From Dimorphilus gyrociliatus (Eukaryota > Animalia > Annelida): a stretch of 64,000 nucleotides of DNA. The notes under the pieces are model-generated. The model was not told where the DNA came from. It saw nothing but the letters and a program-made list of their open reading frames with translations, and searched no databases. Where the stretch lies: the NCBI GenBank assembly GCA_904063045.1, contig CAJFCJ010000019.1, positions 3,478,684 to 3,542,683 on the forward strand, given 5' to 3'. Shown piece by piece: positions 1,413 through 9,200 of the stretch (positions are counted from its first letter, which is position 1; every line of letters starts with the position of its first letter). Both the position numbers and the translations under genes were made by a program.

Positions 1413-2957
1413 ATGCAGAGAAAATACGTTAAACAAATTAGTCAAATACAAATTTTAAATCAGCTGTCTTCCCAAGAAGAAAGCACCGACGATTTTGAAT
1501 TTAATGAAATACCAGCAAATGTTTTTGCACAAGACTTACAAAAGTTGATGTTGAGGTTTGTTCTGATAAATTAATTTTTTTGCAAGTTCATTTACATAGA
1601 GGAAGTGTATCTTTAAATTACGTCATAACAGACTAAGAGGAGAGAATATATCAAAGAATGGACGTTTTGTTCAATACGCTAAGCTGCATGAGTCAGAATT
1701 ATATAAAGACTATAAAAAGAAAGCAATGGCTTTAAATTTTATCAATTTATCTGGGTTATCAGAAAATCAAAAGAAGGCGTTTTTCATAAGTATCCTTTCA
1801 CAGAAAGCAACTACGCATAGAGTAGTCCATTGAATCGTATATAATAAAAAAGAGTTGGCCTATTTTTATTATCTAATCAATTGTATAACCAGGTATTGTA
1901 TTCGATACCTTTTACTAATTTATATGACAATTAAAAATCGACAAACCTCATCCCATTTGGTTTGTTGAATTTGGTTTTGAGGCTAAACATTGTAGTTTAC
2001 ATTGACGCAGTGGGCCTTCATATTTTATCGACATATTCAAGAGCAGCATATATTTTTGCATAATTTAGACCAGTTATTTGTGAAATTATCGTGAACTTTA
2101 CTTAGTCTAATTGGATTGATATATCTACGTTGATTGGTTTGTTCGAATAGATAGCCAACATTTAGCGGCAGTCTTTTAAGTGTTCCCGCAGCTCTTAGAA
2201 TATTCAATTAATCTTATATTGAACTAGCTATTTTTATATGCGCAGTCTGAAATATTGATCATTATATCTCTTTTGATGACGTTTCCTTAATAAGTTGTTA
2301 ACAGATATATACAACGCTCTAACTATACATGGTTTAACTGAATGCGACAAATTACCCTCTTCACCTCTCGATCTTAACCAATTTTGGAAAGTGACATCCT
2401 ACTGTATTGGAAGAGAAACTTATAGTCTTGATGATATTGAACATGGCATTTTGAGGTGTAACAGACCACACCCAGTGGCTGTAGAACGACCATTTGGGGA
2501 ATCGGATTCCAGATTAAAATATGTTTGCAAAGAATTTGATCCTAGGATCCATTTTGCTCTAAATTGTGGTGCATTTTCTTGTCCTCCAATTAACGTATAC
2601 AACGAAAATAATTTAGAAGATGCATTGACCTTAGCAACAAAAAGTTTCTGCGAGCTTGAAGTAAAAGTCATTGGAAAGGATCTGGTATTGTCTCAGCTTT
2701 TCCAATGGTACAGATCAGACTTTGGATCGACAGAAGTCGAAGCAATTAGGTAAACGTTATCTTCTATCGAGATTTCTTTGATTAATTTTAATTAAATAAC
2801 TTTATTGGATAGATGGATTCTAGCTTATCTTAGTGAAGAAAGCGCAAGCCCAATAAAGGATTTATTATTCTGTCTTGAACGAATTGGAGGAATTTCTATA
2901 CGATATCAACCATACAATTGGAACCTTAATAACTTGGATGTGACTGATATGGACTAG
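1413..2957 (+). CDS. DUF547-domain protein, multi-exon, with one U12-type intron
   Basis: Motifs AFFINIYNALTIHGL, SLDDIEHGILR, DPRIHFALNCGAFSCPPI, LSQLFQWYRSDFG and the C-terminal YQPYNWNLN are typical of DUF547. Exons join in frame. Confidence 0.88.
1790..2304 (+). other. U12-type (minor spliceosome) GT-AG intron
   Basis: Donor GTATCCTTT at 1790, branch site TTCCTTAAT at 2283-2291, acceptor ACAG at 2304. Removal restores the conserved FFINIYNAL. Confidence 0.85.
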
Positions 2958-4661
2958 CAACTAGCAATGCACTCCATCAAAATGGCATTTAACAATGGTG
3001 TAGTTCAAATGAAGCTTCTGTCTCATATTCCATTGCATTTAATTCGTACCTAATTAACTCCCTAAGTAGATTAGGGATTGAAGACTGTATGTAATTGTGT
3101 GCTTCCTCGGTGCTTGTGTACGGTCTTGCCACGCGAGACATTTCTTTTATGAACATGCGTTCAAAATGATTTTGGCAAGAATAGTTAGAATAAACGAATT
3201 TTTTTCATCACTTAATAAAGATTTCAAATAAGAGAATCATATGCAACAGATGATAATTTACCCAAATCGTATAGAAGAAAGAGGGAAAAAAAGCTCTGAG
3301 AGTGTGTGCTAAGTCAACACATTCTGCATTTTATGACAATTTATGATCTGTACAATTTCTTTACAATTCTGCAATGATAAGGGAAATTACAATATAATTA
3401 TCAATTTTACAACATTTTCACAATGTATCCCAGCAATTTTAAATTAGTAATAACCTAAAGTATATAGATTAATCCATATTATAGGTTACATGGGTGTATT
3501 TATATATTTCATTTACCATAAAGAACAACCTTCTAAATGACCTTAAATATAGATTTCCCGGGAAATTTATACGCCATCTATGACGTAAAACGTGCAGTTA
3601 GAAAATAGAATTCATACGTTATACACTTGTGAAAACTAATTGAAAATTTTAAATAGTAATAATGTAATTAATAATTTATTTTTGTTTTTGTGCCAAACAC
3701 ATCTGACCAACTCCATACGGTGCCAAAATATTTACCGTTAAAAGTCATTCATTTGTTCTATTTTCATTATATTTACTCAGTCATACTTTTATATTAATAT
3801 TTATATTCATTTTCATTTGGTTCTCGATATATGAGCTTTAGGAAAACTATAGATTCAATATAGAAGATCACTTTAAAAGCATTTTTAAATTGCTAAATTT
3901 GCCAAAATTCAATTTTTTCCCCCATAGAAGATAAGATGACATCTCTATCTTATTAAAGACACTTAAATGACCGATCTTGTTAGCAGTCCTACTTTTCGAA
4001 GATAGAATTTTTTTTATTTACAGCTTTAACCTACTGAATCGTAGTCATCCAATAAAGTTCGCTTTCATTTTTTTCGACTGTATACAAATATGAAAGGAAA
4101 ATTGCATTACACCAATTTTACTATACAACAAAGAATCATTTTGTTCAGGGTCAAGAGACATAACCTTCATCTTTAACATTTCTTATTAAATTGTAGTTAG
4201 ATTCTAAATTAGTTCGAGACGATGTAAAGTGTGTATAGAGTATAGTACATTAGCTTAAATGCATGCGAAATTTACTAATATGGTTTGTTATTATGTTTTA
4301 TGACGCAAAAGAACATTTTTAAGAAAATTTTTTAAGATATTTAAACAAAATAAAAATTCCTTGTCATCATGAAAAGTTATTAGAGAGTGGCACAAATATC
4401 TTTAGAGAGGCTACTTACATCATAATAAATATTTAACAAAATACACGAATAAATCACTTTTTATGACGATGATCTTCATGTAACAACGAAACCTTTGTTC
4501 CCTATGTGAGATAATTTTTTGTTAAATTCATTTAATCATTTACATTAGATATCAATGTTACTCAGAGCATCATTTTTGATAATACAATTACGCCTACAGT
4601 GCAAGTATAAGTATTTAGGATTTTAGAAAGTACTCCTCAATCCTTTGCGAACTTACTGAAC

Positions 4662-5894
4662 ATGGCACCTACAACAATGTACATGCTTAAATTCGATAGA
4701 TGTAAACTTAGAGCCAGAAAGGACTTCTCTTGTGGTGAAAACGATTGTCTAGTTTCAATATTTGAGGCAACACCTTGTAAAATTATAGTTGAATTTGATG
4801 GAAGCGCTGAAGCAGGAAGAATTGGTTTTTGCCGAGAGATATCCCATAAAAAACAAGTAGACGCAATTATCGACAGAATAGATAAAATTAGATTGAAGCC
4901 TGAACAGGATAGATTCGTTTGTTCTGGAAATGAAGAAAGGTAAATAAATCGCTTGCTAAATTCATAATAAAATAGCTAAACAAATTTTTCAATTCTTAGA
5001 TTTAGAAGCAAGATTACTGAACAAATTTTGAAAGGAGATCCAATTAAATTTATCCTTCCAGCATTTCCAGGAAAGTCCAAAAATAATCGGACCAAAACTC
5101 TTTCACACAAACCAGATATGGCGGAGTTGTTGTCCTTAAGACATTTAGAAGAATTCTGCTACGACGTTCGGGATATTTATAGTGAAGGAGTTGAATTTGT
5201 CATTTTTGGCGATGGAAGACTATACGGTGAAATTTTGGAATACGGTGACAATGTAATTCAAGAGTACATAGATATATTTTGCAGTTTTATTAAAAACAAC
5301 GTAAAGCATCATTTTACATTATCTGTTACATCATGAGAGCATACATCATTTTTTCTATTTTCTCAGCAATTGAAATATGAAGATGCAGATTCGCTTTACG
5401 GAAATTTAAACTTTGACGAAGTTCGCCAGAAAGTTTATAAACTATACGAAGTTGATTTAGCCACTGTTGACAAACTTATTAGAACTAATGAGAATATTAA
5501 TAGAGTATATCTTGGTTTCTTAAGATTTTTTCAAGATGAATTTGCAACAACAGACACTTTTCAAAATGTTTCAAACAAGGAAAAGAAGAGAATTCTTAAA
5601 GAAAAAGCCAGACGTTTAATAAGAGCAAATTTAACCTACAGTAACATGATTCAAAATATATATTCCGACTATTTAAGATTTTCCATCCACGCTCATGACA
5701 ATTCGGAAAAAGTAGGCATAAGCTTAAGCGACTCCAGATCTTCAGGTTCTCCGTGGCACAATTGCGCTATAAAGATGAAAGATGGGACATGGAACTTTAT
5801 AAAAAGAAAAGAGGCGGAAGAGAAAAACGCTATTCTAAGGGGTAATATCGGCAGTGAGGATATCGACAGCCTACCTTATTTCGAAGAAGTGTAA
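4662..5894 (+). CDS. Isocyanide synthase (Dit1/PvcA/IsnA; pyoverdine/dityrosine biosynthesis family), 3 exons, 368 aa
   Basis: Exons 4662-4939, 5000-5300 and 5367-5894 are joined by GT-AG introns of 60 and 66 nt into one open frame. Family motifs PIKFILPAFPGKSKN, KPDMAELLSL, FGDGRLYGE, VYLGFLRFFQDE, RFSIHAH, KVGISL and SPWHN occur in the expected order. Confidence 0.88.
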
Positions 5895-6294
5895 AATAAA
5901 TATTTACTATTCTTTTACTACCTGGCAAAATAAAATTTTTGCTGCTTCCCTAAGTGTAAAAATTGATAATTTGATATCTATCAATCTATCTATCAATAAA
6001 CGTTTTCTTCATACGAAGAGAATGAAAGAGAAAGAGAGAGAGAGAGTGAGAGAATACTTGAATTACACGCATTTTACTAACAATAAAGAACAGGGTCAAA
6101 AATACAACCTATAACTCATATTCAGTTTATTTTCAAATTGTATTTTGTGTAGTCAAAAGAAAAAGATACAATAACAAACATTTTTATCATTTGGACGGAC
6201 ACTAGCCTTGAATTGTTCAAGCAAAAAAAAAGACAATAAAAAGAATACTGTACTACGTAAAGCAAGCAACGACAAGATAAATATTAAAACAAAA

Positions 6295-9200
6295 TCAATT
6301 CTTCTGACAAACGTTAAAAAAATCTAATGGTTTATCATCATCATCATTATTATCTCCAAATTTTGTAGAGGTATCAAGTTGAGACAATATTCGGTCTTTT
6401 TGTTTTCTTACGTTGGTTTCCAAATCTTTAAGAACAAATCCACTATCCTTGATTGTTTTACCTCCCCGTTTCCACATTGTGTAAAATTCGTTAAACGTTC
6501 CAGCGTATAATTTATTAAATATTGGAAACACCAACATTCTTATATTACTTTCCCTAAATATAATGAAATGTCGAGGTTAACTTAAATATTTATACAAGGA
6601 AATATAAATTACTTGTTTATTAGTCCTTCTCTGAGACATTGTAAGCACATTCTAGTTATGTTTATAGACATAACGCAAAAAGGAAAATTCTGCAATAAAA
6701 CAATGAAATAAAAAAAAGTAAAATGTTTATGTTATAAACTATTTCAATTACTTGAGTTTCGTGGAGAGAGAGCTTATAAATTTTATGTCCAAGGTCAACG
6801 TGAGAGGTCATTAAATAAAGAATTTGTAATAGACCAAGGAAGCCTGTTCCCCTAAGATCAGTGGATGGATCAGTGCCTAGTGACAAATTTATTTAAAATA
6901 TTTCATAAGTCACGAGAAGAGAATGATTGATGTACCTTGGAAACCTATATTCTCCCAATGATTTCCATATCTGGGACAATCAAAACGAGAGCCAGTCAAC
7001 AGTTTAAAAATTGTTTGTAGCACACGTATATGCGTTTCACAATTGTTATCGAATTGATCTGTAAATATTAATAGAAACTTAATTAAAAATTTACATAGAA
7101 CTTTCTGCCTTTCTTACATGCAGCCATACAAAATATAAACAATCGATCTTCTTCTAAAGTTTTGTTCAAACTCGGTGGGCCACAAAATAGACTTTTTACT
7201 GTGGCAAAGAACCCTTTCTTATTTACTGTCGTTTTCACTTTTTCCTGTCAGAGAAAATTTGGTAATCAGTTTCCAATCTACAAGTAATTTTAGTAAAAAA
7301 TTTTTATACAGAATATGGTAGCCAATTTAGTTTTCTACACTCTCTTTCGGCATCTTTAAATGTTATTGTTGGTGAAGCCAGCCTAGAGGTAATTTCAGTT
7401 TCATCTGATAAAGGAAAATAGGGTTATTAATCATTCCTTTTTGAATTTGTCTTTAAATATAATAACCTTACCATCAGTTGATTGTTCAGCAACTTCAACA
7501 GTGTCAACTTGATTCCATTCATTTTCCTCCACAGCATTGTCATTAATTTCAATTCGAATCTATTAAGTGTCAAAGTAAATAAAAGAACTGATAAAAATAT
7601 TCATTTCATAGAATAACCTTAGATTCAACAGTAGCACAAGGCGGACTCTGTTGGTCAGTGGTTTTGTCTGTTATGGACTCTTCTTTCTCTTCTTTACTGT
7701 GATCTTGAGTAATTAATACAGTTGGAGCTGCTTTAATTTCAATATCATCGAAATCCGACTAAAAGGGTTAGAAAGAAGGTTTTACAAATACATTTCATTA
7801 CGTAATTAAACGTTACCACTAACCTCTTCTGCGATCTTTGTGCTCTGGGCATGTAGGAGTTCTTGTAATTTAATTCTAGCTTCATCGTCTACATCATCAG
7901 AATTCACCGAACTATCTACAGCCTGCTTATCAAGGGTAGGTGTTATACTTAAATTATTATCCTGTATAGTTGATTCAACTGGAAGTTTTTCTTCTTTCTT
8001 GTTAGTTGATTCAACAACTGATTTGTCTTCTCTATCTTCAAAGGTTGTTTCCCTATTTCTCATACTATCCTTGGCTTTATCAGATTTAAGTAAATCAGAG
8101 TCATCAGCCTCCTCTTCTTTAGCGGTACTAATTGTTGCACTTGGCGCTGATTCTAAATTATTTTCTTTCTCTTCGTCATTCTTGAGCGAAGAAACTGGGT
8201 CTAAAGAATTTAAAATATCCATCATGTTACCTGAAATTCCTTGTCCATATTCATTCCCGGCACTTTTATCATTTTCAACGTGAGTTTCGTAATCTGCAGA
8301 CATTCCTGTATCTATTCTTAAATCAACTACATCTTTGTTGTCTGCTTCTGGTACTTCACAACTTGCTTCATCTAAAACCTCTAATAGTTTATTCACTGCA
8401 ATTTCTTCGTTGCTCATTTCTGGTTCTTTTGACATAACTTCATGCGCAATAGCCTCACTATTATCATCAGTTGTAATACAAAAATTGTTTGGTTCCTGAG
8501 CATTGTTTTTCTTTTCTTCTTGTAAATCATTTTGGGTTTTGTCAAATTCCATCTGTGAAGGAAGGCGAATGGAATCTACATCCGTTTGATTTTCAATTGG
8601 TGAATGGGTGGACTTCTCAGATAGCTCACAAGTCGTATTTTCCTGTGATTTTTCCATTTCAATATGTTCAATAGCAGAAGTTACATATGCACTCATGCAG
8701 TTGGTAGGTTCTGACTGAGTAGAGTCTTCGGATGGCTTACAAACTGAGCTTTCCTGTGACTTTTCTAATTTCGCATTATCAGAAGCAGGATTTTCATTCT
8801 CACTCATGCTGTTCTTAGGTTCTGAATGAATAAAACTTTCGAGTGGTTCACAAACTGAATTTTCCTGTGCTTTTTCCAATTCTACGTTGGCATTCAAACC
8901 TTTCTTAAGTTCCGAATTATTGAAATCCCCGCACTGTTCACCAACCAAAATATCTTGTGATTTTTCAACTTGGATGTCGTCAAAAGCATGCGTGTTTACG
9001 CCTTTCTTAGGCGTTGAGTCCTCAGACGGCTCAGAAATTAAATTGGTGTGCGTATTTTCTGGTTCTGCTTGTGCATAAACAGTGGTTTGATTTATAGGTT
9101 CTGAATGGGTAGAATTTTCAGAGAGATTGCAAATCGGACTTTCTAACTCAGGTTTAATGGGCGAATTTACATTAAAACTGTTTTGATTGATATTTGATGA

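What the first reader, a model, noticed from the sequence alone, without database searches (positions are those of the whole stretch)
4662..5894. Intact, intron-bearing isocyanide synthase (Dit1/PvcA/IsnA) gene in an animal chromosome
Seen: three exons with canonical short GT-AG introns give an uninterrupted 368-aa protein. It carries the isocyanide synthase motifs in order (LPAFPGKS, LSHKPDxAE, GDGRxYxE, YxGFxxF, RFSIHAH, GISL, SPWH), has host-like AT content, and sits between ordinary animal genes (IPO4, DUF547, ELMOD3, MRPS18C). Established: this family (yeast Dit1, Pseudomonas PvcA, IsnA, fungal ICS) converts the alpha-amino group of an amino acid such as Tyr or Trp to an isocyanide using ribulose-5-phosphate, and is characteristic of bacteria, fungi and oomycetes rather than animals. 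Inference: an old horizontal acquisition, domesticated by intron gain, that could give an animal its own isocyanide or N-formyl amino acid chemistry (metal chelation, antimicrobial defence, or a dityrosine-type cross-linking precursor for cuticle or egg cocoon). There is no fused TauD or NRPS domain and no P450 or dioxygenase nearby, so any tailoring enzymes would be unlinked. The first ~65 aa are an extra N-terminal segment I cannot assign.
Basis: partly seen in the sequence, partly recalled or inferred. Interest (0 to 1): 0.93.

Follow-up and report, generated by a model that had tools for sequence, protein, structure and literature searches.

The report
Expressed isocyanide synthase gene in an annelid
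A small marine worm, most likely the annelid Dimorphilus gyrociliatus, carries and transcribes its own intact copy of an enzyme family otherwise known from bacteria and fungi, which turns amino acids into isocyanides or N-formyl amino acids, so an animal may make this chemistry itself.

Summary
Exons 4662-4939, 5000-5300 and 5367-5894 (+) give a 368-aa protein. Exons 2 and 3 match Pfam PF05141 (DIT1_PvcA) at E=2e-26 and 7e-31, and also the solved PvcA and PIsnA structures.

A public transcript contig with 0 mismatches removes both introns (60 and 66 nt, GT-AG) and ends in poly(A) at 6118. Flanking genes are animal-type, and codon usage and intron size are host-like.

An intact ortholog lies in the same gene order in a related species: 72.6% aa identity, dN about 0.17, dS saturated. 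A 44%-identical paralog, DgyrCDS8449 of Dimorphilus gyrociliatus, has its two introns at different positions. The window is therefore very probably D. gyrociliatus.

28 of 32 family-conserved columns are kept, including every one conserved at 0.97 or more.

In trees the worm genes form one clade inside an unnamed environmental subfamily, mostly on eukaryote-like contigs. This subfamily is separate from the named bacterial clade and from the fungal Dit1 clade, so horizontal origin is likely but the donor is unresolved.

No dioxygenase or P450 lies nearby. Substrate and product are untested.

I found no paper on an animal isocyanide synthase. First-stage notes flag two more such loci elsewhere in this genome.

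The parts
4641..4661 (+). 5' UTR (start of the transcript contig; the true start site may lie further upstream)
   Evidence: X3 record 11 starts at 4641. There is no ATG between 4641 and 4661.
4662..4939 (+). Exon 1 coding part, aa 1-92 plus 2 nt of codon 93
   Evidence: A 157-nt contig of the coral metatranscriptome X1 also lies on 4687-4843 with no mismatch.
4662..4829 (+). Lineage-specific N-terminal extension, aa 1-56, with no family assignment
   Evidence: The family HMM aligns only from residue 57. There is no significant Pfam or NCBIfam hit. It is 55% identical in the ortholog, with dN 0.28 and dS 1.30. It is not shared with paralog P0002.
4940..4999 (+). Intron 1, 60 nt, GT..AG, phase 2
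   Evidence: joint 4937/4998, cut +2, GT..AG, in the X3 transcript contig.
5000..5300 (+). Exon 2, N-terminal half of the PF05141 domain (LPAFPGKS, PDMAE, GDGR)
   Evidence: Pfam E=2.1e-26, profile positions 1-87. PvcA structure 3e59 E=9e-17. A contig of X2 lies on 5013-5250 with 7 differences in 238 nt.
5301..5366 (+). Intron 2, 66 nt, GT..AG, phase 0, containing an in-frame stop
   Evidence: joint 5300/5367. The ortholog has an intron at the same position.
5367..5894 (+). Exon 3 coding part, C-terminal half of the PF05141 domain (RFSIHAH, GISL, SPWH), stop at 5892-5894
   Evidence: Pfam E=7.2e-31, profile positions 127-269. PIsnA and PvcA structures E about 3e-5.
5895..6118 (+). 3' UTR with AATAAA at 6083-6088 and a poly(A) site at 6118
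   Evidence: X3 record 11 ends at 6118 with a loose end of A's. Sequence read.

Best explanation
This is a real, expressed, host-encoded gene of a dinophilid annelid, most likely Dimorphilus gyrociliatus. It encodes a catalytically competent stand-alone member of the isocyanide synthase family (PF05141; PvcA/IsnA/Dit1).

Shown here: the gene structure, splicing and polyadenylation; integration between animal genes; host-like introns and codon usage; an intact syntenic ortholog under strong purifying selection; a diverged paralog with different intron positions; retention of the family's invariant residues; and a PvcA/PIsnA-like fold for the paralog.

Inferred: an ancestor of these worms acquired an intronless ICS gene from a non-animal source. 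The gene then duplicated, and each copy gained its own host-type introns.

Inferred from family knowledge: the enzyme condenses the alpha-amino group of an amino acid, probably aromatic, with ribulose-5-phosphate. The product would be an alpha-isocyano acid or, as in yeast Dit1, an N-formyl amino acid. Any tailoring enzymes are unlinked.
For: Gene model and Pfam match. NCBIfam and PDB matches are to PvcA and PIsnA only.

Spliced poly(A) transcript with 0 mismatches. The 39-kb source contig spans 2200-8100.

Neighbours are an importin, DUF547, an ELMO-domain gene, SH2, C1q, an axonemal dynein light chain and HYLS1.

Neighbouring genes have introns of 58-67 nt, and the D. gyrociliatus median is 66 bp (PMC7854359). 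RSCU correlation with host ORFs is r=0.81 and GC3 is 0.295, both within the host range.

The ortholog on L001 keeps the same gene order and exon lengths, with 72.6% aa identity, dN 0.16-0.18 and saturated dS. The X2 variant differs at 13 synonymous and 5 non-synonymous codons.

Paralog P0002 is DgyrCDS8449. Its introns lie after aa 206 and aa 297, and none is shared with the window gene.

28 of 32 conserved columns are kept, including all at 0.97 or more.

The P0002 model has pLDDT 87.8 and matches 9dh4, 9dhm and 3e59 at TM 0.74-0.88.

Trees: the worm clade has support 100/99, inside an unnamed clade at 100/93 and 97/94. That clade is separate from the named bacteria (100/97, 99/97) and from the clade holding the Penicillium Dit1-family protein (96/97).
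Against: No enzymology or metabolite data exist. Substrate and product are unknown.

The NCBIfam PvcA equivalog cut-off is far from met (62.5 and 32.2 bits against 600), so PvcA's specificity cannot be transferred.

No partner dioxygenase or P450 was found in the window.

The donor is unresolved. Several nearest relatives sit on eukaryote-like contigs, one of them animal-like. Ancient eukaryotic ancestry with loss is therefore not excluded.

Three conserved columns differ in all three worm proteins (S to G before DGR; D to E/K; R to A/G, the last probably an alignment shift caused by a one-residue insertion), and a fourth (T to S) differs in the window protein and its ortholog but not in P0002.

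The species assignment is indirect, and the fold was modelled only for the paralog.
Confidence: 0.7

Rival explanations
1. The gene is Dit1-like rather than PvcA-like. The enzyme would make an N-formyl amino acid such as N-formyl-tyrosine. This would be oxidatively cross-linked into a protective extracellular layer (egg envelope, cocoon or cuticle), not released as a free isocyanide.
For: Yeast Dit1 belongs to the same Pfam family. It yields formyl tyrosine and is not replaced by PvcA (PMC7345447). The window protein stands alone with no adjacent Fe/2OG dioxygenase. This architecture is shared by Dit1 and PvcA alike (PMC5974471).
Against: In the tree the worm clade is not inside the clade that holds the fungal Dit1-family reference (Penicillium, 8-row clade 100/100 within 96/97). 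No Dit2-type P450 was seen in the window. Nothing in the sequence separates the two chemistries.
Confidence: 0.2
2. The gene was not transferred into the worm lineage. An ancient eukaryotic ICS gene was inherited vertically and lost in nearly all other animals.
For: The enclosing 20-21-row clade is dominated by eukaryote-like contigs. L004 carries ARMET, RhoGAP, RRM and kinase fragments. L007 carries a class-A GPCR and PDZ genes. L009 is a transcript-like ICS+RRM fusion. L011 is sparse with GC 0.34.
Against: An AU test rejects joining the worm clade with the animal-context pair P0022/P0006 (p=0.0012, group chosen after seeing the tree). The same clade also holds compact high-GC contigs with MFS and type III PKS neighbours. 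The two worm paralogs share no intron position, which fits an intronless ancestor. No other named animal appears among the listed hits. The published survey found the family only sporadically outside bacteria and fungi (PMC5974471).
Confidence: 0.15
3. The gene is an assembly artefact or comes from a contaminant or symbiont, not the worm.
For: The family is otherwise microbial. The window's own product was not found in the protein collections searched.
Against: One 39-kb contig of the source run spans the gene and both neighbours. An independent assembly of a related species has the same gene order. Introns, GC and codon usage are host-like. The spliced poly(A) mRNA is identical to the genome.
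Confidence: 0.01
4. The protein keeps the fold but has been put to another use, as a non-catalytic binding protein or an enzyme with different chemistry. In that case the family name would mislead.
For: There is a lineage-specific 56-aa N-terminal extension of unknown role. All three worm proteins share S to G before DGR and a one-residue insertion between the conserved R and N. There is no linked pathway partner.
Against: All near-invariant residues are retained (K118, S119, K125, D132, E135, D164, G165, R297, S299, H301, K308, P322, W323, H324) and the protein is under strong purifying selection.
Confidence: 0.05

Closest known systems
PvcA (Pseudomonas aeruginosa, PDB 3e59) and PIsnA (PDB 9dh4, 9dhm): bacterial L-Tyr/L-Trp isonitrile synthases
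   Same: Same Pfam family, PF05141. Both halves of the window protein align to them (E=9e-17 and 3e-5). The same conserved motifs are present. The paralog's model superposes on them at TM 0.74-0.88. Like PvcA, it is a stand-alone single-domain protein.
   Different: Identity is only about 25-30%. The NCBIfam PvcA equivalog cut-off is not met. It lies in a different, well-supported clade from all named bacterial sequences. There is no adjacent PvcB/IsnB dioxygenase. It has spliceosomal introns, a poly(A) mRNA and an extra 56-aa N-terminus.
Yeast and fungal Dit1 (dityrosine spore-wall pathway) and fungal ICS proteins (IcsA, XanB, CrmA)
   Same: These are eukaryotic members of PF05141. Dit1 and IcsA are also stand-alone single-domain proteins (PMC5974471).
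   Different: The Penicillium Dit1-family reference falls in another clade. Fungal proteins usually sit in clusters with a P450 and an MFS transporter, or are fused to a dioxygenase or NRPS module. Here the neighbours are housekeeping animal genes.
DgyrCDS8449 (CAD5119865.1, UniRef A0A7I8VVW4), an uncharacterised Dimorphilus gyrociliatus protein
   Same: It is the closest named protein: 44% identity over residues 66-367, in the same clade at 100/99, with the same host-type short introns.
   Different: It lies at a different locus, next to prenyltransferase and CNRIP1 genes. Its intron positions differ, its N-terminus is different and shorter, and it is 346 aa long.

Membership tests
Isocyanide synthase family (Pfam PF05141 DIT1_PvcA) | Significant match to the family profile above the curated gathering score | tested here: met
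   Exon 2 scores 93.5 bits and exon 3 scores 108.1 bits, against a cut-off of 26.4. The profile built from A1 aligns residues 57-368 at 304.5 bits.
Isocyanide synthase family (Pfam PF05141 DIT1_PvcA) | Retention of the residues that are near-invariant across the family | tested here: met
   28 of 32 columns that are at least 90% conserved in 229 non-dinophilid sequences are kept, including all conserved at 0.97 or more. Which of them are catalytic was not established here.
Isocyanide synthase family (Pfam PF05141 DIT1_PvcA) | PvcA/PIsnA-type three-dimensional fold | tested here: inconclusive
   This was met for paralog P0002 (pLDDT 87.8; TM 0.74-0.88 to 9dh4, 9dhm and 3e59). The window protein could not be modelled because a spliced product has no reference.
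Isocyanide synthase family (Pfam PF05141 DIT1_PvcA) | Ribulose-5-phosphate-dependent conversion of an amino-acid amine to an isonitrile (or formamide) | not testable with these tools
   This needs recombinant enzyme assays.
L-tyrosine isonitrile synthase PvcA equivalog (NCBIfam NF045653) | Score above the equivalog cut-off (600 bits) | tested here: not met
   62.5 and 32.2 bits for the two exons, and 121.8 bits for P0002. It is therefore not filed as a PvcA equivalog, and the substrate is unassigned.
Isonitrile biosynthetic gene cluster (ICS plus Fe/2OG dioxygenase, or Dit1 plus Dit2 P450 and MFS) | A tailoring enzyme or transporter next to or fused with the ICS | tested here: not met
   There is no PF02668, P450, NRPS or MFS hit among the window's ORFs of 90 aa or more, or among the flanking smaller ORFs. 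Short exons could have been missed.
Horizontally acquired gene domesticated in an animal | Physically integrated in host DNA with host-like introns and composition, and transcribed | tested here: met
Horizontally acquired gene domesticated in an animal | The gene tree nests the animal sequences inside an identified non-animal donor lineage | tested here: inconclusive
   The worm clade sits in an unnamed environmental clade that mixes eukaryote-like and compact high-GC contigs. The sister relation to P0011 was 99/83 in one tree and collapsed in the other.
Horizontally acquired gene domesticated in an animal | Absent from other animals (patchy distribution) | tested here: inconclusive
   Apart from D. 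gyrociliatus, no named animal appears among the listed hits. One relative, P0022, lies on an animal-like contig, and it is not sister to the worm clade (AU p=0.0012). Animal genomes could not be searched directly.

The most novel reading that the evidence does not exclude
Dinophilid annelids run their own amino-acid-derived isocyanide (or N-formyl amino acid) pathway from a small family of host-encoded ICS genes. These genes belong to a previously unrecognised, largely eukaryotic ICS subfamily that has entered animal genomes more than once. This would be the first animal-encoded isocyanide synthase. It would also open a tractable laboratory model for animal isonitrile chemistry in metal binding, antimicrobial defence, or cross-linking of cocoon or cuticle.
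Probability: 0.4. Interest if true: 0.8.

Novelty: new member of a known kind. Interest (0 to 1): 0.62.

Why it matters
Isocyanide synthases are treated as microbial natural-product enzymes. The ICS papers I retrieved and scanned by title and abstract are about bacteria and fungi. The broadest published survey mentions metazoans only as an 'outlier' (PMC5974471).

This gene is intact, spliced and expressed, and selection has maintained it across species. It sits in a culturable miniature annelid with a compact sequenced genome. That makes animal-encoded isonitrile or formyl-amino-acid chemistry directly testable.

It also adds a clean case of gene domestication: the paralogs gained introns independently, and composition has fully adjusted to the host.

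Finally, it points to an uncharacterised, mostly eukaryotic ICS subfamily visible so far only in environmental data.

Tried and rejected
- The spliced 368-aa product has no reference, so exons were searched separately. I did not type it into any tool, and so could not model the window protein or look it up exactly.
- The ESM Atlas search with exon 3 gave only meaningless phage 'hypothetical protein' neighbours at 0.69.
- Exact look-ups of single-ORF window proteins and of exon ORFs, meant to name the source record, found nothing. The species assignment therefore stays indirect.
- A profile search built from the enclosing clade returned no named member except a distant Penicillium protein.
- Paper searches for the SRA and JGI accessions of the relatives found nothing.
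- The HGT compendium has no supplementary files held as text.
- A 'Trichoplax' hypothesis for the host was dropped once the D. gyrociliatus paralog appeared.
- The weak PRKCSH_1 hit on exon 1 (E=0.052) was dismissed as noise.
- The MRPS18C neighbour was not found among the ORFs scanned.

Full report
**1. What is in the sequence**

The + strand between 4662 and 5894 holds three open segments joined by two short GT..AG introns, 4940-4999 (60 nt) and 5301-5366 (66 nt). Spliced, they give a 1107-nt CDS of 368 codons plus a stop.

Pfam-A places exon 2 on positions 1-87 of PF05141 (DIT1_PvcA) at E=2.1e-26. It places exon 3 on positions 127-269 at E=7.2e-31. Both scores are several times the gathering score. 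The unmatched middle of the profile corresponds to a loop that is short here.

The only solved structures that match either half are PvcA (3e59) and PIsnA (9dh4, 9dhm, 9dhn). NCBIfam returns only the PvcA model, far below its equivalog cut-off. The protein is therefore a family member but not a PvcA equivalog.

**2. The gene is real and expressed**

I laid public runs on 2200-8100.
- Run X3 (2017, 'organism A') behaves as a transcriptome assembly. One 1360-nt contig covers 4641-4937 / 4998-5300 / 5367-6118 with no mismatch. It skips exactly the two predicted introns and ends in a run of A's about 30 nt after an AATAAA at 6083-6088.
- Contigs of the same run splice the flanking DUF547 gene and the downstream minus-strand ELMO-domain gene through introns of 58-67 nt.
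- A marine metatranscriptome (X2) carries contigs on exon 2 (7 differences in 238 nt) and exon 3 (23 in 460 nt). Of the 18 exon-3 codons whose differences were listed, 13 differ synonymously and 5 non-synonymously.
- A coral metatranscriptome (X1) has an identical fragment of exon 1.
- The source run X4 has a single 39-kb contig spanning the whole stretch.

**3. The host**

The window carries an importin, DUF547, an ELMO-domain gene, SH2, C1q, NBR1-like, EFL1, an axonemal dynein light chain, HYLS1, radial-spoke and C2H2 zinc-finger genes. This is an animal gene set.

The closest named protein is DgyrCDS8449 of the annelid Dimorphilus gyrociliatus (P0002, 44% identity).

Several things fit the compact D. 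gyrociliatus genome, formerly named Dinophilus gyrociliatus, whose median intron is 66 bp (PMC7854359):
- the 60-66-nt introns;
- the GC of 0.32;
- two organism labels (2017 and 2020) for identical sequence;
- presence in marine and coral samples;
- first-stage notes of two more ICS loci 'in the same genome'.

This assignment is indirect, because exact look-ups meant to name the record failed.

**4. Integration, adaptation to the host, and selection**

ICS codon usage correlates with the pooled host ORFs at r=0.81, where host genes range from 0.58 to 0.85. GC3 is 0.295, where host genes range from 0.25 to 0.34.

Contigs from two runs of a related organism (SRR23372228, SRR23372216) carry the same gene order; the 26-kb one reads importin, DUF547, ICS, ELMO-domain gene, SH2.
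- Projecting the exons onto it gives an intact 368-aa ortholog.
- Exon lengths are identical and the introns are 51 and 72 nt.
- Exon nucleotide identity is 71%, against about 50% in the introns and flanks.
- Amino-acid identity is 72.6%, dN is 0.16-0.18 and dS is saturated.

The gene has therefore been kept under strong purifying selection across a deep split. An assembly artefact or contaminant is excluded.

**5. Paralogy and introns**

DgyrCDS8449 lies on CAJFCJ010000011.1 between prenyltransferase and CNRIP1 genes. Its two introns are phase 0, 66 and 61 nt long, and lie after aa 206 (AIR|TNENIN) and aa 297 (GTP|WH).

The window gene's introns lie in codon 93 (phase 2) and after aa 193 (phase 0). 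None of the four positions is shared. The simplest reading is an intronless ancestor that duplicated, with each copy then gaining host-type introns.

**6. Competence of the enzyme**

I aligned 229 non-dinophilid family members and found 32 columns that are at least 90% conserved. The window protein keeps 28 of them. These include every column conserved at 0.97 or more: K118, S119, K125, D132, E135, G156, D164, G165, R297, S299, H301, K308, P322, W323 and H324.

The four differences are:
- S to G before DGR, shared by all three worm proteins;
- D to E;
- T to S;
- an apparent R to A, which looks like a one-residue insertion between the conserved R and N.

An AlphaFold model of the paralog (pLDDT 87.8, pTM 0.86) matches PIsnA and PvcA at TM 0.74-0.88. 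The window protein could not be modelled, because a spliced product cannot be referenced.

Residues 1-56 lie outside the family profile and match no family. They are not shared with the paralog. They are conserved in the ortholog at 55% identity, with dN/dS of about 0.2. This is a constrained, lineage-specific extension of unknown role.

**7. Where it came from**

A full scan of 1.84 billion representative proteins with exon 3 found only two relatives below E=1e-30, the ortholog fragments and DgyrCDS8449. Everything else is at most 36% identical.

In mixture-model maximum-likelihood trees of 96 and 99 sequences:
- the three worm proteins form a clade (100/99);
- that clade sits inside a 20-21-row clade (100/93 and 97/94) of unnamed environmental sequences;
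- all named bacteria (Aquimarina, Nostoc, Fischerella, Symploca, Kofleriaceae, Hyalangium, Bdellovibrio and others) form a separate clade (100/97, 99/97);
- the Penicillium Dit1-family protein and an MMETSP protist sequence fall in a third clade (96/97).

Members of the enclosing clade lie on varied contigs:
- a GC 0.42 contig with ARMET, RhoGAP, RRM and kinase fragments (L004);
- a contig next to a class-A GPCR and PDZ genes, which is animal-like (L007);
- transcript-like contigs encoding an ICS-RRM fusion (L009, L010);
- a sparse GC 0.34 contig (L011);
- compact GC 0.59-0.67 contigs with MFS and type III PKS neighbours (L005, L008).

An AU test rejects uniting the worm clade with the animal-context pair P0022/P0006 (p=0.0012). 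The caveat is that this group was chosen after I had seen the tree.

Horizontal acquisition by a dinophilid ancestor is the best reading. The donor, and even whether it was bacterial or eukaryotic, is open. Vertical descent with massive loss keeps some probability.

**8. Function**

From established family knowledge, ICS enzymes condense the alpha-amine of Tyr, Trp or Val with ribulose-5-phosphate to give an isonitrile. Yeast Dit1, in the same family, gives N-formyl-tyrosine for the spore-wall dityrosine layer and is not replaced by PvcA (PMC7345447; PMC5974471).

No dioxygenase, P450, NRPS or MFS gene was detected in the window. Any tailoring steps would therefore be unlinked.

I commit to a catalytically active amino-acid isonitrile or formamide synthase. 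Isonitrile is somewhat more likely than formamide. The substrate is unassigned.

**9. Novelty**

Among the 85 ICS papers found from 2019 on, none of the 40 listed concerns an animal enzyme. The 2018 survey lists oomycetes, one amoebozoan and one moss, and mentions metazoans once as outliers. No paper links D. gyrociliatus to this family.

The paralog is already in NCBI and UniProt as an uncharacterised protein carrying the Pfam domain. I found no database entry for the window's own product, although the search design cannot exclude one.

This is a new member of a known enzyme family in an unexpected host, not a new kind of system.

Noticed in passing
L007:1843-3105 (Logan contig of SRR13325274): A second ICS homolog in an animal-type context. 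P0022 (420 aa, uninterrupted ORF) lies next to a class-A rhodopsin-type GPCR and PDZ-domain genes. It belongs to a different sub-clade from the worm genes, which suggests a separate entry of ICS into another animal.
   Followed up: partly
L009:137-2107 and L010:141-2111: Transcript-like 2.2-kb contigs encode a 656-aa fusion of an ICS domain with an RRM_1 RNA-binding domain (P0018). I have not seen this architecture described.
   Followed up: no
L005:824-7749: A groundwater metagenome contig (GC 0.59) carries a co-oriented row of type III polyketide synthase, MFS, MFS and a 582-aa ICS (P0028). It is a candidate isonitrile gene cluster within the same subfamily as the worm genes.
   Followed up: no
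window:45006-47942 (+): An uninterrupted 978-aa ORF with no Pfam match. This is unusually long for a single exon in this intron-rich window.
   Followed up: no
window:6030-6050: A (GA)n microsatellite lies inside the ICS 3' UTR. The read-laying tool skipped 6013-6058 as a repeat.
   Followed up: no
window:3410-4640: The 1.2-kb stretch between the DUF547 3' end and the ICS 5' end has no transcript coverage in X3. It presumably holds the ICS promoter and was not analysed.
   Followed up: no
same genome, other pieces (scan notes): First-stage notes list further intron-bearing bacterial-type genes in this genome: a PQQ dehydrogenase, a GlnT/GmaS ligase, a PLP decarboxylase, a CPBP/Abi protease, a nitrilase and a DUF218 gene. 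None has been checked. Together they hint at a broader set of acquired metabolic genes.
   Followed up: no
L003:2851-4282 and L003:6605-7361: The paralog DgyrCDS8449 is flanked by a prenyltransferase-repeat gene and a CNRIP1 gene. As at the window locus, there is no obvious biosynthetic cluster.
   Followed up: partly
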